A stretch of DNA of 64,000 nucleotides, from the IMG/VR virus record IMGVR_UViG_3300032287_004484, positions 186,001 to 250,000 of that record; one strand, 5' to 3'. The notes beneath the pieces are model-generated. The model was not told the origin of the DNA and made no database searches. It saw only the letters and a list, made by a program, of their open reading frames with translations. Position 1 is the first letter of the stretch; each line of letters opens with the position of its first letter. Positions 70 to 34,846 of the stretch are shown one piece after another. Made by a program: the position numbers and the translations under genes.

Positions 70-573
70 ATGAATGAATCACTTAATGGAGTTTCTCCAC
101 TTTCTAAAGATTGGAAAACACATCTTCTTAAAAATCTTGTTCTTCAAAAAAGAAAAGGATTAGAAGTCAATATTAGTGAAGTTTTAACTGATCTTGAAAA
201 ATTTGCATTAGAAATAATTTCTGAATCTGATATGACGATGAATATTGGATTAGATTCAAGTAAAATCCCTGGTTCACATAATGGAGAAAATCAAATTAAT
301 TTCTTAAAAATGGGCGGAGTCTTTACTTATACCGATTTAGAAAAACTAATTTCTGATTTTACTAGAGCTATGTCAACTTATCAAGCATCTGGAATGGAAA
401 GAGACACTCTCGGAAAAATCTCTAATTATAAAGATATTGCTGATAAAATGTATCGTACTAATATGATTGACGATGAAACAGTAACTAATATAATTACTGA
501 TTTTAACACTACTTATGGTCCAGTTAAAGATAACATGTATGCTCCTTTAACTACATTTAAAGCAGGTGTGTAA
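70..573 (+). CDS. hypothetical protein in the position of T4 prohead core proteins (upstream of prohead protease)
   Basis: Clean ORF, TAATG-coupled to gp21; function inferred from position only. Confidence 0.55.
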   Translation: MNESLNGVSPLSKDWKTHLLKNLVLQKRKGLEVNISEVLTDLEKFALEIISESDMTMNIGLDSSKIPGSHNGENQINFLKMGGVFTYTDLEKLISDFTRAMSTYQASGMERDTLGKISNYKDIADKMYRTNMIDDETVTNIITDFNTTYGPVKDNMYAPLTTFKAGV

Positions 574-1226
574 TGGAATCAATCTACTTATCAGAAGCGG
601 TAGTAATTAAAGATCACGAACTCAAAGAAATTATTATCGAAAGTAATGGTAGAGAAAGAAGAGTCCTTCAATTAGAAGGGCTCTTTCAAAGAGCTAATGA
701 GAAAAATCGTAATGGAAGAATTTATCCTCTTCCTATCTTAGAAAGAGAAGCTTCTCGTCTTGTATCTTCTAAAATTAAAATAGAAGGCGGACTTATTGGA
801 GAAATGGAACACCCTATCATTGAAGCTAATGATCCTAATGCAGTTTCTAGAGCAACTAAAATTCTCTATGAAAGAGCCTGTATCATGATCAAAGATCTTA
901 GAGTTTCTGGAGATGATATTATCGGTAAATGTGAAATCTTAGATGATGCTAATCAATACGGTGCTACTCTAGCATCTATGGCTCGTCGAGGACATATGGC
1001 TGGTATCTCATCAAGAGCAGTTGGATCTAAACCTAAATTAGATTCTAATGGCGGACTTATGGTTAACGAAGATATTCAATTTGTTACTTGGGATATCGTT
1101 AGTGATCCTAGCGTTCATAATGCTAGATTAAAAGCTTTTATCAGCGAAGAAGTTCAGCGAATTCAACACTTACAAAAATCTGGAAGAAAAACTAATCTGT
1201 GGCAAGTTTTAGAAAAATTTAATTAA
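573..1226 (+). CDS. gp21: prohead core protease (T4 gp21-like, peptidase U9)
   Basis: LEGLFQRANEKNRNGRIYP, GEMEHP (catalytic His), GISSRAVG (catalytic Ser), WDIVSDPS; upstream of scaffold and capsid. Confidence 0.92.
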   Translation: MESIYLSEAVVIKDHELKEIIIESNGRERRVLQLEGLFQRANEKNRNGRIYPLPILEREASRLVSSKIKIEGGLIGEMEHPIIEANDPNAVSRATKILYERACIMIKDLRVSGDDIIGKCEILDDANQYGATLASMARRGHMAGISSRAVGSKPKLDSNGGLMVNEDIQFVTWDIVSDPSVHNARLKAFISEEVQRIQHLQKSGRKTNLWQVLEKFN

Positions 1227-5650: not shown

Positions 5651-7249
5651 ATGGAAATTTTTAGTGAATCTTATAAAGCACAAAAAGAAGTAGAAGATAA
5701 ATTATTATCTAAATGGGAACCTGCTCTAGAAGCAGACGGAGGAATAGCAGATGCACACATGGCAAGAACAACCGCTATTCTATTAGAAAACTACATGGGA
5801 CACCTTAAAGCATCTAACCAACTAATAAGTGAATCTGTTACAAGTGGTGACTTTAAAGGGGTTAATCTTGCACTTCTTGGTCTTATCCGAAGAGCAATTC
5901 CCGCACTAGTTGGAGCAGAACTCGTAGGCATCCAAGCAATGCCAACACCTACCTCTCCAATTTTCTACATGAGCTGGAGAAAAGACACTGGTGGAACAGG
6001 AACAACTAAAGGTGGTTCTTCGTACAACGATGAATACTTTGGATATCCTAATGGTGGAGCAGGTCCACTTGGTCAAGCTGATCCATATTACACTTCTCAA
6101 CAACTAAGAAGCGTATTAGTAAAAGAAACACTAGCTACTGGAACAGCTTATGGTATCGTTCTTAATTGGACACCCGTTATTGGATACACAATAAGATTTA
6201 GATTATTAGATGCAAACGGTAGAGTCGTTGGTACATCTTGGATTAACCAAGCAACTCCTACTTCTGGAACAGCTACTGGAGCAAACTCTAGTGGAGTAAC
6301 AGCTTATTCTGGCGGATTAGTAGCAGCTTCTATCACTGTATCTGGAACTTCTGCATCTTACACTAACGCAGCTGGAACTACAGGTACTTCTACAGCTTCT
6401 GTACTATCACCCGTAGTTATCGTTACTACAGCAAGTTCACTAGCTGATGGAGTAAAAATCGTTGTTGATTGGGAATATAACCAAGAATCTAACACTAAAG
6501 CTCCTGATGTTGGTGTTCAAATCGATCAGTTCAACGTGTCTCTCGTAAGAAGAATGTTAAGAGGAAAATTCTCTCTCGATTCTATCACAGATGCACAAGC
6601 ATATCATGGTATTTCTCTCGAAAACGAACTCATGGAAATTATGAAATATGAATTAACCAATGAAATCAACAGAGAAATCATTTCCGACCTTAGATCCATG
6701 GCAGGTATCGCTAACACTTTAGACTACAACTCAAACACTACCTTTAACACTTCTGGAAACTATGATGATTCCTTCAAATTAGTTCTCGATTCCATCAATG
6801 GTCTCGGTGCTGAAATCTTGAATCAGTCTCGTTTAGGAAGAGGTAACTTCGTCGTAGGTAACCCTGTAACTCTAGCATTCTTAGACAGAGTACCTGGTTT
6901 CGTTGGTGCGGGCGTATCTTATGATGGAAAAGGATTAACTTATTCTGGACAAATGGGCAATAGAATTAAATTCTACGCTGATCCACAATACGTTAAAAAT
7001 GAACTACTTGTTGGATATAAAGGACCATCTGCTATCGACACTGGATACATTCATGCTCCATATCTTCCAATTACCGCAACACCTACTCTACTTAACCCAG
7101 AAACTGGTGACCCAAGTAAAATATTTTATACTAGATACGGGAAGACTTACCGTGATTTTGATAAAGACGCTGGTAAATCAACTAACGCTATCTATCGTGG
7201 AGAATATGTATACGGAAGACTCTTTATGCAGAACTTCCCAACAATCTAA
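5651..7249 (+). CDS. gp23: major capsid protein (T4 gp23-like)
   Basis: KWEPALE, TAILLEN, LIRRAIPALVGAELVGIQAMPTPTSPIF, ELTNEINREII, GYIHAPYLP, TRYG; start set at ATG 5651 behind GGAGG rather than 5495. Confidence 0.95.
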   Translation: MEIFSESYKAQKEVEDKLLSKWEPALEADGGIADAHMARTTAILLENYMGHLKASNQLISESVTSGDFKGVNLALLGLIRRAIPALVGAELVGIQAMPTPTSPIFYMSWRKDTGGTGTTKGGSSYNDEYFGYPNGGAGPLGQADPYYTSQQLRSVLVKETLATGTAYGIVLNWTPVIGYTIRFRLLDANGRVVGTSWINQATPTSGTATGANSSGVTAYSGGLVAASITVSGTSASYTNAAGTTGTSTASVLSPVVIVTTASSLADGVKIVVDWEYNQESNTKAPDVGVQIDQFNVSLVRRMLRGKFSLDSITDAQAYHGISLENELMEIMKYELTNEINREIISDLRSMAGIANTLDYNSNTTFNTSGNYDDSFKLVLDSINGLGAEILNQSRLGRGNFVVGNPVTLAFLDRVPGFVGAGVSYDGKGLTYSGQMGNRIKFYADPQYVKNELLVGYKGPSAIDTGYIHAPYLPITATPTLLNPETGDPSKIFYTRYGKTYRDFDKDAGKSTNAIYRGEYVYGRLFMQNFPTI

Positions 7250-15950: not shown

Positions 15951-15960
15951 AAATATACTA

Positions 15961-15989
15961 AAGAGGGAAAACATTTTCCCTCTTTTTTT
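15961..15989 (+). terminator. intrinsic terminator
   Basis: aagagggaaa-acat-tttccctctt plus T-run. Confidence 0.85.
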
Positions 15990-18900: not shown

Positions 18901-20340
18901 ACTTTTGAATATTTTTCTCAGTTAAAAGAAGCTGATAGAAAAATAGCTGATATTGATAGAATTAAACAGATTGTTGGTAAAGAAACTGTTGCTGATATCA
19001 TTTCTCCAAATTCAACTTCTAAATATTCTAATATACTTTATTTAGAATTAACAGATTTATCTAAAGAAATTAAATTTTCAAGATCTTCTACTCCAATTAC
19101 AATGATTCTTTCTCCTGATACAAAAGATGGTGATTCTGGATCTTATAAAATTTATGTATCAAAACATTACTTAGATGATTTTTTAATTAAAAACGATTAT
19201 CTTTCTTCAGAAGATTCTAATAAAAAACTAAACGATAAAGAAATAACAGTTGAAGGTGTTGATATTAATCAAGACGAAAAAGTTTTAGTTATTAATGGAA
19301 AATATGAAACTATTTTTACTCCTTATAAAGGAGAATTAACAGTTGATGATATTTATAATATTTATTATGGACAAGATGATTTAACTAACCCAATTGAAGA
19401 TCTTAAAAATGCAAAAACGGCAGAAGAAGTAATGGGTGCTATTAAAAAGAATAGAAAAAAGGTTCTTGAATTAGAAAGAACAGGAATGAAACTTCAACAA
19501 AAAGCATCTGGACAAAAAGTTGATAAAATGAGATATATTGAAGATGAATTATTTTCTAATTCTAAAGAACTTTTAGACTTATTTCAAAAAAATTCAGATT
19601 TAATGATATCATCTTTACCAACAGTTTCTTCTAAACAAGTTTCTAAAACTAAAAGTAATATTGAAAAATTCAAAGAAAAAATTGATTCTGAAATAGATGC
19701 ATATAGAAAATTAATTTATTTTTATAGAGATAGTATTAATGATGTGGCTGGATCTAAAAAAATTGAAAATATAGTTGAGAAAATTAAAGAAAAAGCAAAT
19801 CAAGTTGTTAAATTTTTCTTTAAATTTTATGATAATTATATTAATCAATTTTTTAAATTATTAATTGATTTAATTAAAGAAAAAAATCGTTACTTTTTAT
19901 CTATTGAACAAACAAATAGTGGAAGTAAAATGGTTACAAAAATAATTTTTAATAAATCTTTATATAGTAGAGGAATGTATTCTACATCATATGAAAGCAG
20001 AATTAAAGATATAAACGATTTTATTGAACATTATGCTAATTTTAATGTTTCATCTGATAAATTTATTTTACTAGATATTAAAGATTTACAAGAAAAATTT
20101 CTTTTTATTCAAGAAGAAATGGAAGGATTTTTAAGTCTTGTTGAAAATGATTCATCTAATACAGAAAGCGTAGCATCTAGTGCTGTAGATATTGAATTAG
20201 AATCTAATCAAAAATCAATAATTACAAATAGAGCGGTTTTAGTTGAAAACTTTGAAACAGGATATAAAAAAGTACAAATATTAAAACCAAATAAATTAAT
20301 TATTTTACATGATATAAAATCTAAATATGAAATTAAATAG
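16000..20340 (+). CDS. large hypothetical protein (1446 aa)
   Basis: Long ORF with AGGAG SD; no recognisable domain. Confidence 0.7.
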   Translation: MNNFTYYIERTVNLAGFKSGGLIYNLALAILHEIQNKSTSEQKEQLRDANIPNLQSLMSIVDKTKNQVSNIARNLNETELPPLPGKKKRSINFHNYSRSKIIQSFYVKVLPTHYIFLNFLIENGYISETFSSSLKQIYNALNQIYANPDLLDKENPVFEKLISLDADEKEVLYTSVEQYINKDKVISNPVEVAKMIQLLFDRKVTSESNQKVKITYNEAIRVYTKLSRMFQKIKDLYSQQGESYGFSNKEIELLASAMEYNLRNPDDIEKTSKFFSDKKEELTKAFSTSIGDFLSDYKTKQKTNPEFSSKNYNDLTKYGVNTPEKAAELIDLIATRKKSADIKRFNQIISLLIEIYAPKENISKDDDDIEAERAGLNELPTQIPFERIPHKVKDGNFKIPDAFDRFINITGNKKLYLQGKEDITELVKEYAEAYGDEIKNVTKQVTTFGDTRTLNILMNTIIDEKDSSMGPSALSQYGDPYAAEVSKLKKINLDIYRYLEDFQKGIVKKNELITFIKDIQEETITQILYLYKKDAKSIRDIKKSDIIPIFKIIYDSKEDKTIAKGVKEVLKLINRILESYREEVDLSQYFKINPETKAPRKPFMYLDDYKDKATGKMVKELLPFWFNPEDPFNKKVWFFTQNEIKLIQTILKTRNLLAGGASNSDMDEIYLDFITIMRLALNGHLKKKTGEDSYESLNIEDLNEESLKKILVQYRADSKKEFEQHRIDRKKEARMVGTVKSSEKLKEQKELGIKTYSKADVATFKRELKKLNKIIEITKSEDLDELLSDYFRIDYIKKNSITKEVEYDELKKFYETYNKIIKIKTSFSNISQHIRQKPSGDAEIKDFLIKTFKSRFIVSDSDIKLAKSIFKENESVSFFNIKFFVKDFLAAKNKQIEDIAGRLKTDINIINLPELDDKNIAIFLKKIFKGMEKPTPEDIQIARIVFDRNDPETVKLEGKINVTFFKLTFEYFSQLKEADRKIADIDRIKQIVGKETVADIISPNSTSKYSNILYLELTDLSKEIKFSRSSTPITMILSPDTKDGDSGSYKIYVSKHYLDDFLIKNDYLSSEDSNKKLNDKEITVEGVDINQDEKVLVINGKYETIFTPYKGELTVDDIYNIYYGQDDLTNPIEDLKNAKTAEEVMGAIKKNRKKVLELERTGMKLQQKASGQKVDKMRYIEDELFSNSKELLDLFQKNSDLMISSLPTVSSKQVSKTKSNIEKFKEKIDSEIDAYRKLIYFYRDSINDVAGSKKIENIVEKIKEKANQVVKFFFKFYDNYINQFFKLLIDLIKEKNRYFLSIEQTNSGSKMVTKIIFNKSLYSRGMYSTSYESRIKDINDFIEHYANFNVSSDKFILLDIKDLQEKFLFIQEEMEGFLSLVENDSSNTESVASSAVDIELESNQKSIITNRAVLVENFETGYKKVQILKPNKLIILHDIKSKYEIK

Positions 20341-21103
20341 TGTATCTTTTCCATTAGATTATACTCACTCTTATTGGAAGGAAAATTTTTCCTTCCTTAA
20401 GGGATATATCATGCAATCCTTAGGACACCCGATAATTCGTATAGAATTATCAGAATCTATGCTTATTCAGGGTATTCATGATTCTATAGCACAATATTTT
20501 AAATATGCTAACGATATTACATCAATTGAATTTGAGTTACTTAATGTTGGAAATGATAATGAAGTAATTTTACCAAGTCATATTGAGATAAATCTAGTGA
20601 AAGATATAGTATTTAGTGAAAATAGTAATGCTTTTGGATTCGTTAATCCAATAGACGAAGGTATATACGCAGCACTACCTATGAGTTCTTTTATTAACAT
20701 TAATGGTGGAACTTTAGATTTAGGTCAGTATTATATGGCTCGTCAGCAATTAGAAGATGCTAATGTAATTACTGGTAGAAAAAAATATTGGGAATTTATA
20801 AGTGGAAAGATAAAATTATTTCCTACTAAAGTTAATGAGAATGTTGGACAAGTTGGAATCTTATACGGTAAAATACCAACACCTCAAGAAATTGAAAGTG
20901 ATGATTGGATTAGAAGATATTCTGTTTCTAGTTCTAAAATAATGTTAGGAACTATCAGAAGAAAATTCAGTGGATTCGCAGCTGCTGGTGGACAAGGTAC
21001 TAGTGATGGTAGTGATCTTATTAATGAAGGAAAACAAGAACAAACTGATCTTATTCAAGAATTAAAAGACGCTAGAGCATCGTTAAGAATGTTCCAAGAT
21101 TAA
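20327..21103 (+). CDS. gp13: neck protein (T4 gp13-like)
   Basis: YIMQSLGHPIIRIELSESML..GIHDSIAQYF; WIRRYS...KIMLGTIRRKFSG...G.DLINEG.QE. Confidence 0.8.
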   Translation: MKLNSVSFPLDYTHSYWKENFSFLKGYIMQSLGHPIIRIELSESMLIQGIHDSIAQYFKYANDITSIEFELLNVGNDNEVILPSHIEINLVKDIVFSENSNAFGFVNPIDEGIYAALPMSSFININGGTLDLGQYYMARQQLEDANVITGRKKYWEFISGKIKLFPTKVNENVGQVGILYGKIPTPQEIESDDWIRRYSVSSSKIMLGTIRRKFSGFAAAGGQGTSDGSDLINEGKQEQTDLIQELKDARASLRMFQD

Positions 21104-21178: not shown

Positions 21179-24100
21179 ATGAAAGAAGAAAAAGAAATCA
21201 TATCAGAATATTTTACTAAACACTATCCAGAAAAAAGAAAAATTGTAATCAATGAAGTTGATGTTGGAGTAGCGGGTGATATAGCAGCTACTGCATCAGC
21301 TGGAGCAACTGGTCTTGGAACTGTAATTGGTTTTGGCGGATTAGCAATTATAGCTCTTATAGTTTATTTTCTTTTCTTTAATAAAAAACCAAATTATGGA
21401 TATTATTCTAATAGCATAAGTGATGACAAATTTTTTAGAGAAACAAATGATTCATTAGAAAAATTAATGAAAAATGAAATGTCTGATGAGGATAAAGAAT
21501 CGTTAAGTCAATATTTAAAAGATATTAAAAGCGTAAAAAAAGAAGATAATAATATCTTAAAATTCTTAAAAAAATTATCAGAAGTAAATACTGATGGCCT
21601 TAATAAAGAAACAATAAAAGGAATAGTTGACTTAACAGCAATATTAACAGACTTACAAAATAAAAAAAATATTGCTGATAATGAAATAAAATTAAGAGAA
21701 ATAGTTCTTAAAATACAAAAATCAAATCCTGAAAATAAAGACATTAAAAATACATCTGGTTCTATCTTAAATTCATTAGAAAATAAACAAGAAATAATTA
21801 ATAGATCAACTAAATATCAAAAATTAATTGCTAAATTATCAGCAACTAATTGGGGTAAAAAACTACCAACAGGTTTCTTTTCTGCTTTAATGATTTCTAC
21901 TCCTAAAAATGAAGCAGAAGATCTTATTAAAAAATCTAGAGAAATATCTAGTGATGATAAAAACGCAGAGAAATATCTAAAAGATAAATTATTTTTTGTA
22001 AAAGAAGATACTGGTGATGGTGTTATAATTAAAAAAACTGATAATGAAGAAACTAATGACGGAAAAATTGAAAGTTCTGGGGGTGTTTTAAAAATTTTAT
22101 TTAATGATGACAAGTTAAAAGATAAATTTTTAGAAGAAAATCTTTCTCTTGATGAGAAAAAATTAGAAGAATTTTTACAAGATTCAGAAATTAAAATTGA
22201 ATATAAAAAAGATTCTGAAGAAACAAAAGAAGAAAATATTAGCTTATCAAACGATTTAAAAAGTAATAAAAATAGAGAATTAAATATTACATTAAATAAT
22301 GATGGAACTTTTAAAGAATCAAAAGAAAAAACTAATTATAAAATAATATTTAATGCAGAATATAAAACTTTTGAAATAAGATCAAAACAAAAAGAAAAAG
22401 ATGCAGATAAATTTTCTAAAATTGAAAGTTCAATATTTGAGGCAGAAGAAGAAGAGTATCCTTATATTATCTTTACTGGAAAATATGAAATATCAGAAAA
22501 TAAAGTTATAATAAAAAATAGTAAAAAAGTTGACGATGGATTTTCTAAAAAAGAGCCACAAGAAGAAGTAGAATCTGAAATAGTAGAACCAAAACAACAA
22601 ACAACAAATAAACCTGAAGAACCCCAAGATAACGAACAAAAAAACGCGGAGAAAAAACCCGTTAAAGAAACTCTTGAAGATAATTCTAAAAAACCAAAAA
22701 CAAATTTAAACGATTTTATTGAAAAGAATTTTTTTATTTTTACAAATAAAAAATTAGAGCCAGTTAAAGATAAACCAAGTAATAAAAGTTATATTAGTTT
22801 TAAATTAGAAGAAGGTAACAGAGAAAAAGGAACTAATCGTAGATATGAAATTACAACTATAATTGTTCCAGAAGATTCAAAAGAAGCATTATCTTTAATT
22901 TATAATGAAAATGATTTAATTATAAAAACTAAAGGTTTAATAGCTGAAAGATCAAGAAGCAGTTTATTCTCAAATTTAATTAAAATTTTTGAAGCAGATG
23001 AAAAAGCACCAGAAGATTTTTTAAGTTCTGAAATGTCTACATTAAATTTTAAATATGAAACAAAAGACAGTATAGATTTAGATAAAATAAATACAGGTGA
23101 TGGTCAATTTATAATTACAAATCTATTTAAAAATAATCTTAGAAGCGATATTGCTGAAAAGATTTTTGATAAAAAACTTGAATTTTTTAAAGATCAAATT
23201 AAATCTAAAAAAACATACAAAGACCTTAGTGATTTTCAACAAGAAATAATAAGTTATAGTGAAAATTTTAGAAAATTAACGAATAATTTTAAAGAAAAAA
23301 TCTTTGATCCGTCAGAAAGATTTATACAGGATAATCTTTCAGATGAAATTAAAAAAATGAGCGATCAAAGTTTTCAAAATTTAGTTAAACTCAAAAAATA
23401 TAAAAATATATTAGAAAATTTATATAAAAAAGATAAAAAATATAACAATTTAAATAAAGGCCAGCAAAGATTAGTTAATTTAATTCAAGTAAGAATAAAT
23501 CAACTTCACGATCTAGAATTAGATTATGATAATACAAAAGGTGAACACTCTGATATTAATGATCTTATAAAAAATAATGGTGAATTTAAAGAATTAAAAA
23601 ATATTCCAAATAAAGATTTTTTTGAAAAATTAGATAACGATATTCAAAAATTAAATGTAACAAATATAAAAGAAGAAGCTTATCCTGAAGGAGCGGGTAT
23701 AGAAGATACAGAAGATGCCGTAGAACCCGTGGATTCAGATGAAGAAAATCTAGAAAATGATGAAGATCAACAACCGGCTTCATCTGCAAGTAAAGATAGT
23801 ATTATAAAAGAATTAACTGATTTAAAAGGTATTAGTGCTATTTCTTTTTTTGACGCTGATATTAAAGATGATAATAAAATATCACTTAAACAATTTGATA
23901 AAGAATCTAAAAAACCTTATTGGATAGCAATTTCACTAGAAAAAGAAGAAGAAGATAAAACTAGAATTTTTAAATTTATAATTTTTACAAGAAATAAAAA
24001 TGAAGAAATAAAAAAAATAGACAAGCAATTTGAAGTTATTTATGAGAATTTTTTACAAAAAATAAATGCAAAAGTCAATGCATTATTTTCTGGAGATGTT

Positions 24101-26209
24101 TCTGTTATGGATTCTGAAGTTTATAATGGAAAAATAAAATTAGTTGGTGATGTTTTAAGTTTTATTGAAATAAATAAAATTGAAGATAAAAAAACAAAGA
24201 AAAAAGAATCACAGTCTACATCTAATCAAGAAGCAGAACCAGAAGGAGAGGAAGAAAAAACACCACGAAAAACTCTATCTCCAAAAGAAATAATAGCAAA
24301 ATTATTTAAGTTTCTAAGTCCTAAAACAAGTAAAGAAGAAAAAAATAAAATAAAAAATGAAATTCCCAAAGTAATAGAGGATGGTAAGATTAATGCTATT
24401 GAGGTGCAAGAAATAGCAAATACAGCAAATTTCCAAGATCCATCTGAAATACTAATAAACGCTACACCAAATCCAATAAAACTAGAAGAATCTAGTGATT
24501 TTAAGTCTTTTAAAGGTAAAAAATTAAATCATTTTTTTGAACAAATTTTTTCAAAAGAAGTAAAAAAACAATTTTTCTATAATGAGCAAGACGATAAATC
24601 TTCAATAGAAAAAGAAAAAGCTCCTCCAAGTAAAATTACAACTGTAGATGATTTAATGGACACTTTATTTCCATCTAATGTATTTGTAATAAATTTAAAT
24701 GATGGTGAAAATAAAATAAAACAAGTTAATGATTTTAGTGAGAATGTTTTTAATGAATTACAAAATGGTATAATATTTTATAAAAAGAAAGATAAAGATT
24801 TTTATATAGGTCAATTAAAAATTAAAGATTTATCTATTTTTACTGAAAATAAAGTTTTATTAGAAACTTATTTTGATTTTAATAATGAAAATGAAGATCT
24901 TAAAAAGACTCTTAATGAAGCTGAAGAAGTGAAACACACTGATATTTTATCTGGATCACCTTGTGAAGTTAATATTGAATCTATAACTTCTATTGATTCT
25001 AAAAATAATATTATAACTAATTTTAAAATAACTGTTATTAAAAGAGGAATTGTAAGTTCTAATAAGTTTTTAAATAAATATACTAAAATAGATAAAGAAG
25101 AAGATAAAAAACTTATTAAAGATACTGCTAAAAAAGATTTAGAAGAAAAACCAATACAAGATCAAAAAAGTATAGAGCAAAAAGAAGTTACTAAAACAGC
25201 TGAAGTTACTTCTACAGATCAATATTTTATATCTTTAGATGATATTAAGAATAAAAAGAAAACAGTAACTGATACGGTTTCTGGAGAAGCAGGTATTATT
25301 TTTACTAAAACCAAGAATAATTTTATTGGTTATTTATGGTTAAAAGAACTTAATAAAGTAGATGAGTTAATTGGATTTAATGAAATTATTGCTTTACAAG
25401 ATTATTTTAATTTTTCATTACAAGATTTTATAATTACAGAAGAGATACAAATTAAAGATTATAGGAATAATTTTATTTCTAGTGGATCTTTAATTGTTGA
25501 AATTGTAAATAATGAAATTACTAAAATAATTTCTAAAGGTAATATTAAAGATTTCTATTATACAAAATTAGAAAAATCTAAACAAGATTTATTAAAATCA
25601 GAAATTGAAAAAACAAGTAAAGAAGCTGCTTATAAAAAATTTGGTTTAACTGATTTATTAACAATCGGAACTGAAACTGAGGAGCAGGCTGTAGAGTCTC
25701 CTACTGGATTTATTTCTTTAAAAGAATCTTCTAAAATAGGCAATTTAATTCCAAAAAATTATAGAAATATAGATCTTGTATTATCTAAAAAAGATTTTAA
25801 AGTTTATTATTTTATAAAATCAAGTGAAGATTATTATTATATTGAAATAGATAAACATATTTTTTATATTTTAAGTTTTATAATTAAAAATTTTAAATTT
25901 ACATTTGGAACTTCTAATTCTATTATAAATTTAGATAAAGATCTTGTTAATGGTGATATAAAATTAAAAGATTTAAAAATGATTTTAAAAACTCAAGTTC
26001 CAATAGATAAAAACATAAAAAAATTAAAATTTAAATTTGGTAAATTAGAAGAAAAAATTGTTGATGGTAATAAAATATCTTTTAAATTTCCAATCAATAC
26101 TTCTCTTCAACCAAAAATTGGTGAACCAAAAAAGATTCCACAAGAAAATAAAAAGCCAACTGTTGAATCAATTGAAAAATATATTATTGAAAGCATATGG
26201 AAAAAATAA
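21179..26209 (+). CDS. very large hypothetical protein with N-terminal TM segment, candidate ejected virion protein
   Basis: 1676 aa; leader ending VINE, then Gly/Ala-rich and hydrophobic segment. Confidence 0.7.
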   Translation: MKEEKEIISEYFTKHYPEKRKIVINEVDVGVAGDIAATASAGATGLGTVIGFGGLAIIALIVYFLFFNKKPNYGYYSNSISDDKFFRETNDSLEKLMKNEMSDEDKESLSQYLKDIKSVKKEDNNILKFLKKLSEVNTDGLNKETIKGIVDLTAILTDLQNKKNIADNEIKLREIVLKIQKSNPENKDIKNTSGSILNSLENKQEIINRSTKYQKLIAKLSATNWGKKLPTGFFSALMISTPKNEAEDLIKKSREISSDDKNAEKYLKDKLFFVKEDTGDGVIIKKTDNEETNDGKIESSGGVLKILFNDDKLKDKFLEENLSLDEKKLEEFLQDSEIKIEYKKDSEETKEENISLSNDLKSNKNRELNITLNNDGTFKESKEKTNYKIIFNAEYKTFEIRSKQKEKDADKFSKIESSIFEAEEEEYPYIIFTGKYEISENKVIIKNSKKVDDGFSKKEPQEEVESEIVEPKQQTTNKPEEPQDNEQKNAEKKPVKETLEDNSKKPKTNLNDFIEKNFFIFTNKKLEPVKDKPSNKSYISFKLEEGNREKGTNRRYEITTIIVPEDSKEALSLIYNENDLIIKTKGLIAERSRSSLFSNLIKIFEADEKAPEDFLSSEMSTLNFKYETKDSIDLDKINTGDGQFIITNLFKNNLRSDIAEKIFDKKLEFFKDQIKSKKTYKDLSDFQQEIISYSENFRKLTNNFKEKIFDPSERFIQDNLSDEIKKMSDQSFQNLVKLKKYKNILENLYKKDKKYNNLNKGQQRLVNLIQVRINQLHDLELDYDNTKGEHSDINDLIKNNGEFKELKNIPNKDFFEKLDNDIQKLNVTNIKEEAYPEGAGIEDTEDAVEPVDSDEENLENDEDQQPASSASKDSIIKELTDLKGISAISFFDADIKDDNKISLKQFDKESKKPYWIAISLEKEEEDKTRIFKFIIFTRNKNEEIKKIDKQFEVIYENFLQKINAKVNALFSGDVSVMDSEVYNGKIKLVGDVLSFIEINKIEDKKTKKKESQSTSNQEAEPEGEEEKTPRKTLSPKEIIAKLFKFLSPKTSKEEKNKIKNEIPKVIEDGKINAIEVQEIANTANFQDPSEILINATPNPIKLEESSDFKSFKGKKLNHFFEQIFSKEVKKQFFYNEQDDKSSIEKEKAPPSKITTVDDLMDTLFPSNVFVINLNDGENKIKQVNDFSENVFNELQNGIIFYKKKDKDFYIGQLKIKDLSIFTENKVLLETYFDFNNENEDLKKTLNEAEEVKHTDILSGSPCEVNIESITSIDSKNNIITNFKITVIKRGIVSSNKFLNKYTKIDKEEDKKLIKDTAKKDLEEKPIQDQKSIEQKEVTKTAEVTSTDQYFISLDDIKNKKKTVTDTVSGEAGIIFTKTKNNFIGYLWLKELNKVDELIGFNEIIALQDYFNFSLQDFIITEEIQIKDYRNNFISSGSLIVEIVNNEITKIISKGNIKDFYYTKLEKSKQDLLKSEIEKTSKEAAYKKFGLTDLLTIGTETEEQAVESPTGFISLKESSKIGNLIPKNYRNIDLVLSKKDFKVYYFIKSSEDYYYIEIDKHIFYILSFIIKNFKFTFGTSNSIINLDKDLVNGDIKLKDLKMILKTQVPIDKNIKKLKFKFGKLEEKIVDGNKISFKFPINTSLQPKIGEPKKIPQENKKPTVESIEKYIIESIWKK

Positions 26210-28245
26210 TGAATGAAAAAAAAATAATAGAACAGTATTTTAATAATTATTTTTCAAGAAAAAATAAAAGAGTTTATAATGAAGATTTAATTACTATTTT
26301 TGCTGTCGGATCTTTTTTATATTTTTTAATGTATGTTTTACTTAGAGTTTTTACTGTTAATAAATTTGAAAAAGAAAATATAACTTATAGATTAGAAAAA
26401 AATCCTCAACAAGTTAACCAAATAATAAAATTTTTAGATGAAATAAAAAGAACTATTAAAAATGATATTAGTGATAAAAAACCAGATAAAGCTTTTGATA
26501 TAATAGATATATTAGATAAATATTTATTATCTTTTAAAAAATCGGGTAGTCACGAAGAAAGCAAATTAATATTAGATAAAATAACATCTAACATTAAATC
26601 ACTGTTAGAAGAAATTTTAAATTTATATCTTAATAAAGATCAAATTAAAAAACAAAATATTTTTAATAAATTAAGATTTATTTTAAATCAATTTGGTTTA
26701 ATGGATAAATTTGAATTGATATTACAACAAGTTTTAGAAAAAAGTAATAATGTTATAAAAAACGATAATAAAGAAGAAGTAAAAGTAGAACCAAAAGTGG
26801 TGATTGATACAGTAGTTACAAGTCCGGGTGTATCCGAACCGTCCGAAGAAAAAGAGGTCCCAGAACCTAAATCACCTTCAATCAAAGAAATACCAAAAAT
26901 TGAACCAATAAATTTAAAAGATGAAGAAATATTAAATTTTTCAGATATTGATGTTCAAGAAGATGAAGAGGTTCAAGAAGATGAAGAAGAGAGTGATGAA
27001 GATAGAATAGAAAGAGAAAGACAAGAACAAGAATTAGAAAATGAAAAAAGAATTGCTAAAATTGATGATATAAGAAATAATTATAATAAATATTTAAAAA
27101 AGTTTCCTAATGATTTAGTTATTGGAGTTGTTTTAAGAACTTTAGATGATCTTGAAAACGAAGATGAAGAATTATTGGCTGAATTATATGATATTTTAAA
27201 TTTAAATAAAACTATTGAAGAAATAAAAAAAGAATTTTCTCAATCTGAAGTAGGTGCGTGGGGTTTAAAGAAAATAGAATCAATAAAAATAATTAATAGT
27301 TATAATGAATTGAATGAATTTTTAATAGATAAAAACATTAAAAATAATGGTTTAATTATAAATACACAGATGCAAATTAAAAATGATTCTTATTTTTTAG
27401 AAATTAAAATTTATAAAAATAAATATCAAGATGGAATTATAATGCCATTAAATTCACAGGATTTTGATAATACTGCTTTTAATGATTTTTATATTTTAAG
27501 ATTTATTAGGGAACCTGGAAACGATGAAAGAATTTTTTCTATTTTTATAACGCCAGAACAAAAAGAACAATACGGTTTATATAAATTTAACTCAAATAAA
27601 ACATTTAATTTTATCATTAATGAATCATCAACTAAAACATATTCAAATTTTAACATTAAAGCATGTACTGGTAATTGGAATATCTATGAAGAAAGAATAA
27701 GCTTTACTAAAGTTAAATTTGAACAAGGATTTGAATTTAAAGAGATTACTGAAGATGATAATAACAGAGTTTTTATTTTAGCAGGAGATAATTTTTTAAT
27801 TGAAAGAATTAATCGAATAAATCCAACTAGTAAAGATGTAGTATCAGAAACTCCAAAATATCATTATTGTATTTCTATGTTAATTGATAAACAAGATCCT
27901 AAAAAAATACAAAAATTATATCTAATAAAACCAATTACAACTAATTTTATTAATGTTTTACAACAAGTTTATCAATCTAATAAAATTATATATATTAATA
28001 AAAATAAACAAAAAGAAATTTTAAATTTAGATCCTAGCATACAAGAACATAAAGTAATTTTAGATTCAATAAAAAGAACTACTACATCTGGAGATATTAA
28101 CCACCTGTTGCAGGCTTTTGAAGATCCACAATCAGAAGAATTTCCAGATATTCAGTTTCATCAAGTAAATGATGATGCTATTAGTTATCAAAAAACATTA
28201 GTTAAAATAGATACAAGTAAAAATAATTGGATGTATATTAAATAA
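26209..28245 (+). CDS. hypothetical protein with N-terminal TM segment
   Basis: TAATG-coupled start; leader ending VYNE then LITIFAVGSFLYFLMYVLL; 18-nt tandem duplication (VQEDEE x2) at 26953-26987. Confidence 0.7.
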   Translation: MNEKKIIEQYFNNYFSRKNKRVYNEDLITIFAVGSFLYFLMYVLLRVFTVNKFEKENITYRLEKNPQQVNQIIKFLDEIKRTIKNDISDKKPDKAFDIIDILDKYLLSFKKSGSHEESKLILDKITSNIKSLLEEILNLYLNKDQIKKQNIFNKLRFILNQFGLMDKFELILQQVLEKSNNVIKNDNKEEVKVEPKVVIDTVVTSPGVSEPSEEKEVPEPKSPSIKEIPKIEPINLKDEEILNFSDIDVQEDEEVQEDEEESDEDRIERERQEQELENEKRIAKIDDIRNNYNKYLKKFPNDLVIGVVLRTLDDLENEDEELLAELYDILNLNKTIEEIKKEFSQSEVGAWGLKKIESIKIINSYNELNEFLIDKNIKNNGLIINTQMQIKNDSYFLEIKIYKNKYQDGIIMPLNSQDFDNTAFNDFYILRFIREPGNDERIFSIFITPEQKEQYGLYKFNSNKTFNFIINESSTKTYSNFNIKACTGNWNIYEERISFTKVKFEQGFEFKEITEDDNNRVFILAGDNFLIERINRINPTSKDVVSETPKYHYCISMLIDKQDPKKIQKLYLIKPITTNFINVLQQVYQSNKIIYINKNKQKEILNLDPSIQEHKVILDSIKRTTTSGDINHLLQAFEDPQSEEFPDIQFHQVNDDAISYQKTLVKIDTSKNNWMYIK

Positions 28246-29306
28246 TGTTATTAACTATTTATTTTGAGAAAAAAGCATCTGAATCGGTAACAAAAGATCT
28301 TGATAAGATGTCAAAAAAATATAAACTTCCTATTAAAACAATTAATAATTTAGTGTCTGGATTAGAAGGTGTAGATCCGCTAAAAGGAAAATTAAAAGTA
28401 TTTTATTCTTTAATTAGTAGAAGATATATCTCTGTAATTTATACTTATTTAAATCGTAACGCTAACATTGATTTAACCGAAAGATCACAAGCAAAAATTT
28501 TGTTAATAAGAATAAAAGCATTAGCGTATAACATAAAAAAACAAATCTTACAGTATATAGAAACATCTAACGCTACAGATAAAGAAGGAATAGAAAAACA
28601 AAAAATGATAACAGAAGACATTATTTTAAAAATATATTTGCTTTTTAAATTAATAGAAAAAATTAATAGTTTTTTTGAACAAAATGAAATTCAATATAAA
28701 AAATTTATTAATTATGTTTATTCAAAAATATTTGATTTATTTGAAAGAGAGAATGAAGCGAAAAAAATATATAAAAATGATGAAAAATATTTTAAAAGTT
28801 TTCCAGATTTAATTTCTGGATTAAGACCGCATAAAGCTTTAGAAAATATTATTACATTTAATAAAAAAGCAGAAAAAAAAGATAAGCAGTTAAATCAAAT
28901 CAAGACCTATTATTTAAATTATAAAGGCAATTTTAATTTTTTAATTATTCCAATAGTAACATCTCAGTTTTATATAGATAAAACAACACCATTTGATTTT
29001 TTAATAGGACAAAATGAAAATAAATTTGAAATTTTTTCGTTAGAATTATATGATCTTAATAATACTGAATTTAATATTCTAAAAAAAGATATTAAATCTA
29101 AAAAATCAGTTTTATCAACCATGTTTAATATAGTTGATAAAAATAATAAAAAAGTAAATTTAAAAGATATAAAAGATATAAAAAATATTAACGTTATAAA
29201 ATTAGGAAGTTTTTATATAAATAATATCGAAAGACATAAGAATAAACAAATAAACCTAGAAGAGAATTTTAAAAACTCTAAAATTGGAGAAATACAAATT
29301 GAATAA
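28245..29306 (+). CDS. hypothetical protein
   Basis: TAATG-coupled 353-aa ORF. Confidence 0.65.
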   Translation: MLLTIYFEKKASESVTKDLDKMSKKYKLPIKTINNLVSGLEGVDPLKGKLKVFYSLISRRYISVIYTYLNRNANIDLTERSQAKILLIRIKALAYNIKKQILQYIETSNATDKEGIEKQKMITEDIILKIYLLFKLIEKINSFFEQNEIQYKKFINYVYSKIFDLFERENEAKKIYKNDEKYFKSFPDLISGLRPHKALENIITFNKKAEKKDKQLNQIKTYYLNYKGNFNFLIIPIVTSQFYIDKTTPFDFLIGQNENKFEIFSLELYDLNNTEFNILKKDIKSKKSVLSTMFNIVDKNNKKVNLKDIKDIKNINVIKLGSFYINNIERHKNKQINLEENFKNSKIGEIQIE

Positions 29307-30027
29307 TAAAGATATTTATAATTATTATATGAAAAGAGTTTATAACGAAGATGCAGCAATAACAGCAGCAAGTAGTTTAATTGATGGAGCTAACGCTGCT
29401 ACGAGTGGAATTGCTCCTGAATTATTAGGATTAACAGCACTTAAATATTTAACTCATCAAGCTTTTAAATATACTGATGGTTTAATTGATTCTAAAAATT
29501 CTGATAAAGTAATTAATAAAAAAGGATTAAGCGATATAAGAATACCTGAAAAAGATTTAAAAAACAAGAAAGATCTTGGAAAAAAGTTTTCTTATTTTTC
29601 AAATTCAATAACAACTAATCCAGAAACATATTTTAAATATATAATATTAGAATACATGTTAATTAAATTAGGTTATATAGAAAAAGAAAAAATATCAGCA
29701 GATGATGCGGTTTTAGATTATTTTGATTATGATAATAATAAAATGTTTGATTTACATAAAGATTTATCTACAAATAATTTAAACATTTTAATTAAAAAAG
29801 AATCTTCTAATGATCCTAATTATCCTAAAACAAAAATAATAAGTTCTAAATATAATAACGATAAAATATCAAACATATTACTTTTTGTAAAAAATAATAA
29901 AAATGTTTTTAATAATGCAATTGAATCTGTATTTGTTTTTGGTGAAAACATTCAATCTAAAGGAGTTTTTACGAGTGAGATCACTAAATTATATGATAAA
30001 ATTCCTTCATCATCAAATGTTTTTTAG
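29299..30027 (+). CDS. hypothetical protein with VYNE leader and Ala/Gly-rich segment
   Basis: TTG start 9 nt after GGAG; leader shared with 21179 and 26209. Confidence 0.65.
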   Translation: MNNKDIYNYYMKRVYNEDAAITAASSLIDGANAATSGIAPELLGLTALKYLTHQAFKYTDGLIDSKNSDKVINKKGLSDIRIPEKDLKNKKDLGKKFSYFSNSITTNPETYFKYIILEYMLIKLGYIEKEKISADDAVLDYFDYDNNKMFDLHKDLSTNNLNILIKKESSNDPNYPKTKIISSKYNNDKISNILLFVKNNKNVFNNAIESVFVFGENIQSKGVFTSEITKLYDKIPSSSNVF

Positions 30028-30036: not shown

Positions 30037-30585
30037 ATGTCACAATGGTATCATCCAACTAATATAGACTTAGATATATGGGATCCATTAAACCATGAAC
30101 ACTGGTTAGTTGATCAAGAATCTATCGATCATATAAAAATAAATTCTCCATATGTTTTATATTGGAAGATTGATCAAGAAAAGACGGAAATGAACAATGA
30201 TGAAATTTCTAATCTTTATCAAGAAAGTGATCAATTAGTTTTTTATAATTCTGAACCAATTAGAGTTTATGTATATGTAGAAATATCACCTATTGTTCAA
30301 GAATTAAGCAGGATAGGGGTTTCAGAATTAAGAGAAATAAATTTTATAACTAATAAAACAGATTTAATTGAAAAGATTGGAAGATTTCCGCTACCAGGTG
30401 ATTTATTAAGTATTTCTTATTTTGAAAAAGATAAAAAGAAAACTCAAAGTTTTTATAATTTAGTTTCAACTAGTGATGCCGATTTACATCTTTATCGTTA
30501 CGTTCATTTTATTTTAAATTGTGAACAAAGCAATCTTAGTAATATACCTAAACACATATTTGATTATCAATTTAAAGAATACTAA
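30037..30585 (+). CDS. gp14: neck/head-completion protein (T4 gp14-like)
   Basis: LVDQESI...VLYWKID...LYQES...F; PLPGDLL; position before gp15. Confidence 0.7.
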   Translation: MSQWYHPTNIDLDIWDPLNHEHWLVDQESIDHIKINSPYVLYWKIDQEKTEMNNDEISNLYQESDQLVFYNSEPIRVYVYVEISPIVQELSRIGVSELREINFITNKTDLIEKIGRFPLPGDLLSISYFEKDKKKTQSFYNLVSTSDADLHLYRYVHFILNCEQSNLSNIPKHIFDYQFKEY

Positions 30586-31374: not shown

Positions 31375-32136
31375 ATGAATGAAAATAAAATTTATAATTA
31401 TCGTCCATTATTTGGACATTACTTTTTAGAAATACAAAAATTCTTTGCTCTTTTTGCTATATCAGGAGTTGATCAATATAATAATCAGATAAAACCGATT
31501 GTAATAATGGGAACTCCTCAAGCAGCTTTTAGAAAAATTAATACACCAATATCTAATATTTCAGGAACTAATCCAGCAAGCATAAATAGTTCAGCTAATT
31601 TACCAGCAATAAATTTTATTGCTATGGATTTTAGAAGAAATTATTCTATGGAAAATCCATATGTTCATGTAAATAGAGGTAAAGCTCCTAACGATTATTT
31701 AGGAAGAGAAAAAGTTTTAATATCTTATTCTCCACAGTCTTGGGAAATAACTTTTCAAGTATCTATTTGGACTGATAGTTATAAACAGCGAGACGATATT
31801 ATAAGTAAAATTTTAATAATGTTTCGACAAGATTTAACTATACCTTATTATCCTGATCCAGTTAATTATCCAAACGAAAAACTTTGGATTGAAGTTAGAA
31901 TGGATGAATCTTTTAGCGATGAAACAAATTTAGAAGATTTACAAGAAAAAGAATCTAGAAAATTTGTTAGGACTTCTTTTACAATGATCTCTAGGGCAAT
32001 ATTACCATACGATATGAATTATGTTTCTACAATTTTAAGAATACAAATTGAAAATGAAATTCTTGCTAATCAAGGTAACTATCTAACTTTTAGTTTAGAA
32101 ACTATCGAAGGCGAAGAAATAGTTGTTTTATCTTAA
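31375..32136 (+). CDS. gp15: tail terminator / sheath stabiliser (T4 gp15-like)
   Basis: LPAINF..MDFRRNY, PQSWEITFQVSIWT...DDIISKIL; position before sheath. Confidence 0.7.
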   Translation: MNENKIYNYRPLFGHYFLEIQKFFALFAISGVDQYNNQIKPIVIMGTPQAAFRKINTPISNISGTNPASINSSANLPAINFIAMDFRRNYSMENPYVHVNRGKAPNDYLGREKVLISYSPQSWEITFQVSIWTDSYKQRDDIISKILIMFRQDLTIPYYPDPVNYPNEKLWIEVRMDESFSDETNLEDLQEKESRKFVRTSFTMISRAILPYDMNYVSTILRIQIENEILANQGNYLTFSLETIEGEEIVVLS

Positions 32137-34792: not shown

Positions 34793-34813
34793 TTTTTAAA
34801 AATATTTTTATTG

Positions 34814-34846
34814 AAAAAAGTGGATCATATTGGTCCACTTTTTTTT
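34814..34846 (+). terminator. intrinsic terminator after sheath
   Basis: aagtggatca-tat-tggtccactt plus T-run. Confidence 0.8.

What the first reader, a model, noticed from the sequence alone, without database searches (positions are those of the whole stretch)
21179..30027. About 9 kb of unknown genes inserted between gp13 and gp14, three with the same cleavable-looking leader followed by a membrane segment
SEEN: the leaders MKEEKEIISEYFTKHYPEKRKIVINE, MNEKKIIEQYFNNYFSRKNKRVYNE and MNNKDIYNYYMKRVYNE are each followed directly by a hydrophobic or Gly/Ala-rich stretch (GVAGDIAATASAGATGLG...LAIIALIVYFLFF; LITIFAVGSFLYFLMYVLL; AAITAASSLIDGANAATSG...LLGLTAL). The genes are translationally coupled. 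KNOWN: gp13 and gp14 are adjacent in T4, and T4 gp21 cuts after (I/L)-x-E to remove capsid-targeting propeptides. INFERENCE: these are head-packaged, protease-matured proteins that are ejected and insert in the host membrane, possibly a DNA-entry conduit or early effector set not described for T4 itself.
Basis: partly seen in the sequence, partly recalled or inferred. Interest (0 to 1): 0.62.

Follow-up and report, generated by a model that had tools for sequence, protein, structure and literature searches.

The report
Shared cleavable-looking leader on phage proteins
In an uncultured 290-kb T4-type jumbo phage, three adjacent and otherwise unrelated genes start with the same short leader that ends in an invariant Glu, and two continue straight into a membrane helix. 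They most likely encode capsid-targeted, protease-trimmed proteins that are ejected into the host, a variant of a device known from T4 and phage SPN3US, but only sequence comparison supports this.

Summary
Four translationally coupled genes lie at 21179-30027: p1676, p682, p353 and p247. Three of them begin with one shared 17-26 residue leader ending in [V/I]-[Y/I/L]-[N/K]-E.

A profile of the leader hits only these three genes in the whole genome. p1676 and p682 share nothing else.

In 13 p682 homologues (24-76% identity to the window's protein) the leader is the most conserved 25-residue stretch, and its P3 Tyr and P1 Glu are invariant.

Corrections to the finding:
- Only p1676 and p682 have a true membrane helix. 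p247 has an amphipathic, small-residue-rich stretch.
- p247 starts at TTG 29299 and p682 at ATG 26209.
- The "gp14" flank cannot be confirmed.
- The block is a conserved module of a small metagenomic clade, not a fresh insertion.

The phage encodes a gp21-family (S77) protease. Its capsid maturation site, placed by homology, is hydrophobic-x-Glu, and reads V-N-E in a relative.

Best reading (about 0.5): these are T4-style capsid-targeting propeptides on ejected, membrane-active proteins, as proposed for SPN3US gp47.

Virion location, cleavage and membrane insertion are all untested. Fold, family and complex searches gave no function. I rate it a new variant of a known kind, of moderate interest.

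The parts
573..1226 (+). Prohead protease of the T4 gp21 family (Peptidase_S77). It is the enzyme proposed to cut the leaders.
   Evidence: PF03420 at E 9.1e-20, above the curated cut-off. It is 29% identical to RB49-type gp21, E 5e-20. His80 and Ser146 are invariant in 32 homologues.
5651..5833 (+). Inferred 61-residue propeptide of the major capsid protein (gene 5651-7249). It ends in L-I-S-E and is used here as the reference cleavage site for this phage.
   Evidence: phrog_138 at E 7.5e-60. The alignment to RB49-type gp23 puts I-x-E of both proteins in the same columns. The relative L010 has L-V-N-E at this site. The cleavage itself is inferred by homology.
20411..21103 (+). gp13-like neck protein (head-tail adaptor Ad2), the upstream flank. 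The longest ORF starts at 20327. ATG 20411, behind an AAGGGA site, matches the 230-aa calls in relatives.
   Evidence: phrog_211 at E 2.5e-17. tblastn to annotated T4-gp13-like proteins. PF26809 on orthologues. Start context.
21179..26209 (+). p1676, a 1676-aa Lys/Glu/Ile/Asn-rich protein. The order is leader, Gly/Ala-rich spacer, transmembrane helix, a conserved ~300-aa N-region, a middle of variable length, and a conserved ~560-aa C-region with an internal ~110-aa duplication.
   Evidence: ORF. There are no Pfam or PHROG hits. Orthologues are 1768, 2313, more than 2376 and 1835 aa long. Conservation map. Duplication.
21179..21256 (+). Leader of p1676 (aa 1-26), ending V-I-N-E. Cleavage is proposed after Glu26.
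   Evidence: Orthologues end in V-L-N-E (L006-L008) and I-Y-N-E (L014).
21311..21379 (+). Predicted transmembrane helix of p1676 (aa ~45-67). It is preceded by an ~18-residue Gly/Ala-rich stretch (aa 27-44).
   Evidence: Kyte-Doolittle 19-residue maximum 2.64. The helix is kept in orthologues.
26209..28245 (+). p682 (678 aa from ATG 26209). The order is leader, transmembrane helix, helical bundle (aa ~50-180), acidic disordered linker (~200-260), a second helical region, and an alpha/beta C-domain (380-678).
   Evidence: AlphaFold2 model with mean pLDDT 68. No significant fold match.
26209..26283 (+). Leader of p682 (aa 1-25), ending V-Y-N-E. Cleavage is proposed after Glu25.
   Evidence: M1, I7, Y10, F11, Y23 and E25 are invariant in 13 homologues that are 24-76% identical to the window's protein. 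It is the most conserved 25-residue window, rank 1 of 654.
26287..26352 (+). Predicted transmembrane helix of p682 (aa ~27-48), directly after the leader.
   Evidence: Kyte-Doolittle maximum 2.32, and 2.1-2.35 in the five orthologues measured. A similar hydrophobic stretch is visible in the distant homologues. Modelled as helix 27-49.
28245..29306 (+). p353, the most conserved protein of the block (59-96% identity among relatives), with no leader and no membrane helix. Its role is unknown. A chaperone or partner of its neighbours is a guess only.
   Evidence: AlphaFold2 model unusable, pLDDT 45. No atlas, PDB or Pfam hit.
29299..30027 (+). p247 (242 aa from TTG 29299). A short form of the leader (aa 1-17, nt 29299-29349, ending V-Y-N-E) is followed by an amphipathic Ala/Gly-rich stretch that is not a membrane helix.
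   Evidence: Start and ribosome-binding site. Leader invariant in 4 orthologues while the next ~40 residues vary. Hydropathy maximum 0.5-1.1. In L014 the gene at this position has a 13-residue leader ending I-I-N-E.
30037..30585 (+). 182-aa protein, 90% or more identical among relatives.
   Evidence: Alignment. No PDB, Pfam or PHROG support. hhalign against RB49-type gp14 gives probability 0.7%. PF11649 finds nothing in the genome.

Best explanation
The leader is a capsid-targeting propeptide of the T4 kind.

Proposed mechanism:
- Its N-terminal part, with the invariant Ile7, Tyr10 and Phe11 of p682, docks the protein to the scaffolding core while the prohead is built.
- Its end, [V/I]-[Y/I/L]-[N/K]-Glu, is cut by the phage's gp21-family protease during head maturation.
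- Cutting would leave mature p1676 starting with a Gly/Ala-rich stretch followed by a membrane helix. Mature p682 would start directly with a membrane helix. Mature p247 would start with an amphipathic helix.
- These proteins would travel in the head with the DNA and leave through the tail at infection. Their freed hydrophobic N-termini would insert into the host inner membrane, to help DNA entry or to anchor large effector or scaffold domains there.

What is shown:
- one leader is shared by three otherwise unrelated proteins;
- the leader is extremely conserved and its Glu is invariant;
- two membrane-grade helices are present;
- a gp21-type protease is present, with a matching hydrophobic-x-Glu capsid maturation site;
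- the genes are co-transcribed-looking and translationally coupled, and sit among neck and tail genes.

What is inferred: packaging into the head, cleavage at that Glu, ejection, and membrane insertion.
For: 1. The leader is modular. The profile hits only the three genes in 290 kb. The p682 and p1676 families share only the 24 leader columns.
2. Conservation fits a signal rather than a fold. The leader is the top-ranked 25-residue window in 13 p682 homologues. In p247 the leader is invariant while the following ~40 residues diverge.
3. The site has protease-site logic. P1 Glu occurs in 16 of 16 aligned leaders and never Asp. P3 is Y/I/L and P4 is V/I. P2 (N/K) and P1' (D/E/S/V/F/G) are free. 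In T4, targeting maps to the N-terminal part of the 10-residue signal and processing to P3 and P1, and Asp at P1 blocks cutting (PMC9026906).
4. The enzyme is present: PF03420, homologous to gp21.
5. The capsid protein's homologous maturation site is I-S-E here and V-N-E in relative L010.
6. Leader lengths of 13-27 residues lie within the 7-65 residue range of T4 propeptides.
7. There is a precedent. SPN3US gp47 is a head protein cut by the prohead protease, and its mature part starts with a predicted transmembrane helix. It is proposed to be an ejection protein (PMC5694885; PMC10052503).
8. The genes are coupled and lie in a block of about 19 kb that runs from p1446 to the sheath gene. No terminator-like hairpin with more than 5 pairs was found on that strand, and hairpins flank it at 15960-15985 and just after the sheath gene.
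Against: - There is no proteomic or structural evidence. The phage is known only from metagenomes.
- P3 is Tyr in most leaders, whereas the T4 rule is Leu/Ile.
- Hydrophobic-x-Glu strings are common in this AT-rich proteome, so the motif alone is weak.
- A leader followed at once by a membrane helix also looks like the cytoplasmic tail and signal anchor of an ordinary inner-membrane protein. Such a helix would tend to be inserted co-translationally, which conflicts with packaging a 190-kDa protein in a head.
- The genes sit in the neck and tail block, about 15 kb downstream of the protease, scaffold and capsid genes.
- The protease plus leader complex prediction gave no answer.
- No fold or family match gives the mature parts a function.
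Confidence: 0.5

Rival explanations
1. These are ordinary inner-membrane proteins of the infected cell and are not packaged. The leader is a shared cytoplasmic docking peptide, for example for the portal, neck or prohead. p1676 and p682 are anchored by a signal-anchor helix, and p247 is a soluble partner. One version has them tether the assembling prohead or neck to the membrane. Cutting at the Glu would then release the particle while the membrane proteins stay behind.
For: - The leader is directly followed by a strong membrane helix, and basic residues precede the helix in p682.
- T4 and SPN3US proheads assemble on the inner membrane and are released upon proteolysis (PMC9026906 and PMC10052503).
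- The genes lie next to the neck gene gp13, not the head-core genes.
Against: - p247 carries the same leader without any membrane helix.
- Net charge on the two sides of the helices is nearly balanced, so topology is not predicted.
- In the N-in topology that a signal anchor implies, 630-1600 highly charged residues would have to be exported. No export or periplasmic domain signature was found.
- This reading does not explain why P1 is always Glu and never Asp.
Confidence: 0.25
2. These are virion proteins of the tail or neck channel rather than the head. p1676 would be a tape-measure-like or pilot protein in the tail lumen. The leader would be an assembly signal for neck or tail proteins, not a protease site.
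For: - The genes lie between gp13 and the gp15-like, sheath and tube genes.
- p1676 is long and carries a hydrophobic segment, as many tape-measure proteins do.
Against: - No tape-measure family hit.
- The length varies from 1676 to more than 2376 aa among relatives whose sheath proteins (794-797 aa) and tube proteins (225-227 aa) keep almost the same length.
- A better tape-measure or tail-lysin candidate lies elsewhere, at genome 99046-102174 (phrog_23574 at E 7e-8).
- This reading does not explain the same leader on three unrelated proteins, or the invariant Glu.
Confidence: 0.12
3. The resemblance of the three N-termini is chance or compositional bias in a 25% G+C genome. The ORFs would then be unrelated genes of unknown function with no common mechanism.
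For: - Pairwise BLAST of the leaders alone is not significant (E 0.33).
- Lys/Asn/Ile/Tyr/Glu-rich strings are frequent here.
Against: - Profile-profile E is 5.7e-5.
- No other gene in the genome scores better than E 0.12.
- The leader is kept in all orthologues, down to 24% identity with the window's protein.
- In a distant relative all three genes at these positions still carry it.
Confidence: 0.02

Closest known systems
T4 capsid-targeting sequences (the propeptides of internal proteins IPI, IPII, IPIII and Alt), removed by the gp21 prohead protease
   Same: - Short N-terminal leader on proteins whose mature parts are unrelated.
- Two-part logic: a targeting part, then a processing site with key P3 and P1 residues.
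- P1 is strictly Glu.
- A gp21-family protease is encoded by the phage.
- The leader is more conserved than the cargo (PMC9026906).
   Different: - The leader is longer than the 10-residue minimal T4 IPIII signal: 17-27 residues here and in close relatives, 13 in L014.
- I did not compare it directly with T4 leader sequences.
- P3 is mostly Tyr instead of Leu/Ile.
- The cargo is giant (27-190 kDa, against small basic internal proteins). Two cargoes begin with a membrane helix.
- The genes lie in the neck and tail block.
- Nothing has been tested experimentally.
Salmonella giant phage SPN3US gp47, a head protein cut by prohead protease gp245 and a proposed ejection protein
   Same: An N-terminal propeptide ends in small-or-hydrophobic-x-Glu. 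The mature fragment starts with a predicted transmembrane helix that is proposed to act on the host membrane. The family is poorly conserved among related phages (PMC5694885 and PMC10052503).
   Different: - The gp47 propeptide is 79-111 residues and its motif is A-x-E.
- SPN3US belongs to the phiKZ-like lineage.
- tblastn of p682 and p247 found no match in 50,697 phage records.
- Here three proteins share one leader, and two are several times larger.
Internal core and ejection proteins of podoviruses (T7 gp14/15/16; P22 gp7/16/20)
   Same: These are capsid-carried proteins that leave with the DNA and build or support a channel through the host envelope. Some have hydrophobic segments. This rests on general knowledge and was not tested here.
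   Different: They have no protease-removed targeting leader and a different virion architecture. No homology was detected.

Membership tests
T4-type capsid-targeting propeptide (substrate of a gp21-family protease) | Short N-terminal leader (7-65 residues in T4) carried by otherwise unrelated proteins | tested here: met
   Leaders are 13-27 residues long. Only the leader is shared between the p682 and p1676 families (lengths from PMC9026906).
T4-type capsid-targeting propeptide (substrate of a gp21-family protease) | Leader ends in Leu/Ile-x-Glu, with Glu obligatory at P1 | tested here: inconclusive
   Glu is invariant in 16 of 16 aligned leaders. P3 is Ile or Leu in the p1676 leaders of the window and L006, and Ile in the L014 counterpart of p247. 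It is Tyr in the L014 p1676 leader and in all p682 and p247 leaders seen. The capsid site of this clade tolerates Ile or Val at P3.
T4-type capsid-targeting propeptide (substrate of a gp21-family protease) | The phage encodes a Peptidase_S77 prohead protease | tested here: met
   PF03420 at E 9.1e-20. His80 and Ser146 are invariant.
T4-type capsid-targeting propeptide (substrate of a gp21-family protease) | The protein is incorporated into proheads and the leader is removed in mature heads | not testable with these tools
   No virion proteome exists and the phage is known only from metagenomes. The complex prediction gave no answer.
SPN3US gp47-like ejection protein | Propeptide followed by a transmembrane helix at the mature N-terminus | tested here: met
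   Met by p1676 and p682 (hydropathy 2.64 and 2.32). Not met by p247.
SPN3US gp47-like ejection protein | Sequence or fold homology to gp47 | tested here: not met
   p682 and p247 have no tblastn match in the phage collection. The BFVD fold search found no significant match. p1676 was not searched by tblastn.
Tail tape-measure protein | Match to tape-measure families, and length tied to tail length | tested here: not met
   No Pfam or PHROG hit. Length varies by more than 40% among close relatives. Another candidate exists in the genome.
   PF11649 finds nothing in the genome at E <= 10. hhalign probability is 0.7%. No PHROG, Pfam or PDB hit. Position alone still allows it.

The most novel reading that the evidence does not exclude
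A protease-primed membrane-insertion device in a contractile-tailed phage. Head maturation would cut off the leader and expose, at the new N-terminus of giant ejected proteins, a Gly/Ala-rich hydrophobic peptide, much as priming cleavage exposes the fusion peptide of class I viral fusion proteins. At infection these proteins would insert into the host inner membrane and form or anchor the DNA-entry conduit. This step is still poorly understood for T4-like myoviruses.
Probability: 0.18. Interest if true: 0.8.

Novelty: new variant of a known kind. Interest (0 to 1): 0.5.

Why it matters
How large myoviruses get DNA and proteins across the inner membrane is still unclear. So is which proteins travel in the heads of uncultured jumbo phages.

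If this reading is right, it gives three things:
- A simple sequence rule for finding packaged cargo in a whole clade of uncultured T4-type jumbo phages: a conserved leader ending in [V/I]-[Y/I/L]-x-Glu.
- Evidence that a gp21-type protease can accept Tyr at P3.
- Two very large proteins whose mature N-terminus would be a membrane helix. These are candidates for a phage-made entry conduit or membrane-anchored takeover platform.

The leader could also serve as a portable packaging tag in these phages, as the T4 signal does.

If the membrane-protein rival is right instead, the block would be a phage-encoded membrane assembly platform tied to the neck genes. That would also be new.

Tried and rejected
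FAMILY AND SIMILARITY SEARCHES
- Pfam and PHROG scans of all four proteins found nothing.
- tblastn of p682 and p247 against 50,697 phage records found no match.
- IMG/VR scans with gp13, p247 and the p682 profile found nothing. The JGI metagenome scan also found nothing.
- The word-index search gave only 5 homologues each for p682 and p353.
- The exhaustive profile search over 1.84 billion proteins gave 12 hits for p682. That is useful, but it shows the family is tiny.

STRUCTURE
- ESM Atlas look-alikes: none.
- AlphaFold2 of p353 gave pLDDT 45, which is unusable.
- AlphaFold2 of p682 gave pLDDT 68. Foldseek against PDB and BFVD, VIA-align wide and the atlas shape search returned only generic helical-bundle matches for aa 50-164 (Z <= 9.9, below the level that means anything for helical bundles). 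Nothing matched the C-domain.
- Complex prediction of the protease with the p247 leader gave 'no answer'. That is evidence neither for nor against binding.

PROMOTERS
- The T4 late-promoter motif and sigma-70 scans are at or below chance in this AT-rich DNA. I make no promoter claim.

RELATIVES AND HABITAT
- The leader profile could not be run on the long contigs of relatives, L016 and L017, because those records are not held.
- The sequencing-run search returned only coded 'metagenome' DNA runs, with no habitat and no RNA.

gp14
- The 182-aa protein, p353 and p247 each give only insignificant local alignments to RB49-type gp14.

REJECTED IDEAS
- A Sec signal peptide, because the leader is hydrophilic.
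- A spanin or holin, on size and on the leader-bearing p247 lacking a helix.
- A recent foreign insertion, because synteny is conserved (G+C is 20-25% in this block against 25.6% genome-wide).

Full report
CONTEXT

The window is bases 186001-250000 of a single 290,274-bp virus record with 25.6% G+C. The record has direct terminal repeats and is rated complete.

It is a very divergent member of the T4 superfamily. The capsid protein (5651-7249) hits phrog_138 at E 7.5e-60 but is only about 25-30% identical to any deposited phage.

Recognisable neighbours in the window:
- a gp21-type protease (573-1226; PF03420, E 9.1e-20);
- an acidic scaffold-like protein (4504-5631, assigned from composition and position only);
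- a gp13-like neck protein (20411-21103; phrog_211, E 2.5e-17);
- a weak gp15-like protein (31375-32136; PF16724, E 0.0026, below the curated cut-off);
- the sheath (32408-34792) and tube (36522-37199) genes.

All relatives found come from metagenomes.

THE OBSERVATION

Four same-strand genes fill 21179-30027. True starts and coupling:
- p1676 starts at ATG 21179.
- p682 starts at ATG 26209, sharing one base with the p1676 stop (TAATG).
- p353 starts at ATG 28245, again with a TAATG overlap.
- p247 starts at TTG 29299 behind a GGAG site, overlapping p353 by 8 nt.
- The next gene starts 9 nt after p247.

The three leaders align cleanly. The p247 leader is the same leader with an internal 8-residue deletion.

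This is more than chance:
- A profile of the leader finds only these three genes in all six frames of the genome: E 2e-13, 5e-13 and 1e-5. The next hit is E 0.12.
- Profile-profile comparison of the p682 and p1676 families aligns the 24 leader columns and nothing else (E 5.7e-5).

Hydropathy confirms a membrane-grade helix in p1676 (aa ~45-67, maximum 2.64) and in p682 (aa ~27-48, maximum 2.32). It does not confirm one in p247. There the post-leader stretch reaches only 0.5-1.1, is amphipathic, is rich in small residues, and differs among orthologues.

Only 21 of 320 ORFs of 100 aa or more have such a helix in their first 80 residues. p1676 and p682 are the only ones longer than 500 aa.

RELATIVES

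The word-index search found five p682 homologues at 39-75% identity.

Their contigs show the same order: large protein, gp13, p1676 homologue (1768 to more than 2376 aa), p682, p353, p247, 182-aa, 118-aa, 119-aa, gp15-like, 58-aa, sheath.

The exhaustive profile search over 1.84 billion representatives found only 12 proteins. Eight of them are new and distant, six at 24-28% identity to the window's protein.

All keep the leader and a hydrophobic helix. Across 13 sequences the invariant columns include M1, I7, Y10, F11, Y23 and E25. The leader is the most conserved 25-residue window of the family, rank 1 of 654.

In the most distant contig with context, L014:
- the p1676 orthologue has the leader ending I-Y-N-E plus a helix. 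Orthology is confirmed by 35% identity over 342 C-terminal residues;
- the p682 orthologue has the leader plus a helix;
- the gene in the p247 position has a 13-residue leader ending I-I-N-E, followed by a Gly/Ala-rich stretch.

There the block follows a different large gene, not gp13. So the block is a conserved module of a small clade, not a recent insertion.

WHY A PROTEASE-CUT TARGETING PROPEPTIDE IS THE BEST READING

The end of the leader has the anatomy of a processing site. Position by position:

| Position | Residues seen |
|---|---|
| P4 | Val or Ile |
| P3 | Tyr, Ile or Leu |
| P2 | Asn or Lys |
| P1 | Glu always, never Asp |
| P1' | Asp, Glu, Ser, Val, Phe or Gly |

In T4, gp21 cuts after Leu/Ile-x-Glu. 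In the 10-residue signal of IPIII, targeting maps to the N-terminal part and processing to P3 and P1. Asp at P1 blocks cutting. Identical or similar leaders sit on divergent internal proteins (PMC9026906).

This phage has the enzyme. Its capsid protein aligns with an RB49-type gp23 so that I-x-E of both fall in the same columns. That gives L-I-S-E here and L-V-N-E in relative L010. The clade's protease site therefore already shows variation at P3 and an Asn at P2.

The combination of a propeptide and then a transmembrane helix at the mature N-terminus of an ejected head protein has been described for SPN3US gp47 (PMC5694885; PMC10052503).

The AlphaFold2 model of p682 places the site in a non-helical linker between a leader helix (3-14) and the membrane helix (27-49). 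Confidence there is low, so I give this little weight.

WHAT REMAINS OPEN

Nothing shows that these proteins are in particles, are cut, are ejected or enter a membrane.

Points against the best reading:
- Tyr at P3 departs from the T4 rule.
- A hydrophilic tail followed at once by a strong helix is also what an ordinary signal-anchored inner-membrane protein looks like.
- Charges flanking the helices are balanced, so topology is undecided.
- The genes sit with the neck and tail genes rather than the head-core genes.

These points feed the main rival: membrane proteins of the infected cell that share a cytoplasmic docking peptide, perhaps tethering prohead or neck assembly. That idea is compatible with the membrane-bound proheads of T4 and SPN3US that are released by proteolysis. 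It does not explain the leader on the helix-less p247.

A tape-measure or tail-lumen role for p1676 is less likely:
- It has no family hit.
- Its length varies by more than 40% among close relatives.
- A better candidate lies at genome 99046-102174.

FUNCTION OF THE MATURE PARTS

Function is unknown.
- The p682 model shows a helical bundle (aa ~50-180), an acidic disordered linker, a second helical region and an alpha/beta C-domain. Only generic helical-bundle similarities were found.
- p1676 has conserved ends, a variable low-complexity middle, and an internal ~110-residue duplication.
- p353 is the most conserved member and has no leader. Its model was unusable.

THE gp14 FLANK

The 182-aa protein is 90% or more identical among relatives. 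It has no detectable link to gp14. PF11649 finds nothing anywhere in the genome. In an RB49-type phage a homing endonuclease already separates genes 13 and 14. In phage 121Q the gp13-like gene is followed by a small hypothetical gene, a deoxynucleotide kinase and the sheath gene, with no annotated gp14 nearby. Adjacency of genes 13 and 14 is therefore not a fixed rule.

VERDICT

The signal is real and non-random. It is best explained as a T4-style capsid-targeting and processing leader carried by three unrelated proteins, two of which would mature into proteins that begin with a membrane helix.

It is a new variant of a known kind, found in orphan families of an uncultured jumbo-phage clade. 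Confidence in the full mechanism is about 0.5, and interest is moderate.

Noticed in passing
window 2138-4108 and 4177-4455: Two head-module proteins lie between the protease and the scaffold. One is 656 aa with an internal hydrophobic stretch visible in the translation at about aa 165-190 (not scored). The other is 92 aa. Both carry an I-I-L-E motif near the N-terminus (I-I-V-E in relative L010). These look like further hydrophobic-hydrophobic-x-Glu protease sites, like the T4 gp67/gp68 core proteins.
   Followed up: partly
window 16000-20340: A 1446-aa protein sits just upstream of gp13, the position of fibritin (wac) in T4-like phages. Its family keeps a short N-terminus ending Y-[I/L]-E, followed by a conserved motif. 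This could be another short propeptide.
   Followed up: partly
window 9561-10460: A di-haem cytochrome c peroxidase gene (PF03150, E 2e-32) lies inside the structural region and is conserved in relative L010. It is an unusual auxiliary gene and hints at a diderm host with a periplasm.
   Followed up: no
window 7347-8555: A GIY-YIG/NUMOD3 homing endonuclease lies directly downstream of the major capsid gene, and is also present in relative L010.
   Followed up: no
window 37263-38528: The 421-aa protein right after the tail tube gene has an N-terminal membrane or signal helix (hydropathy 2.63 at residue 5). It has no family hit.
   Followed up: no
genome 91115-93322 and 99046-102174 (outside the window): The portal homologue (phrog_213, E 1e-50) lies about 95 kb from the protease, scaffold and capsid genes, so the T4 head-gene order is broken. 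A nearby 1042-aa protein has a ~90-residue domain that hits tape-measure and endolysin families.
   Followed up: partly
window 24680-25550 (p1676 aa ~1168-1278 and ~1348-1456): There is an internal duplication of a ~110-residue domain in the conserved C-terminal part of p1676. The local alignment score is 95, against 42 +/- 7.5 for shuffles.
   Followed up: partly
L007:17711-19639: In one relative the p682 orthologue is split into 134-aa and 405-aa ORFs with a ~300-nt gap. This is either a disrupted gene or an assembly error.
   Followed up: no
window 15960-15985 and about 34800-34840: Two G+C-rich hairpins followed by T-runs bracket a block of about 19 kb that runs from p1446 to the sheath gene. 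On the coding strand the scan found only one weak 5-pair hairpin in between, at 31403-31417. This suggests one long late transcription unit.
   Followed up: partly
window 29635-29655 (p247 aa 113-119): An invariant K-Y-I-I-L-E-Y motif in the p247 family is another conserved hydrophobic-x-Glu string that could be an internal processing site.
   Followed up: no
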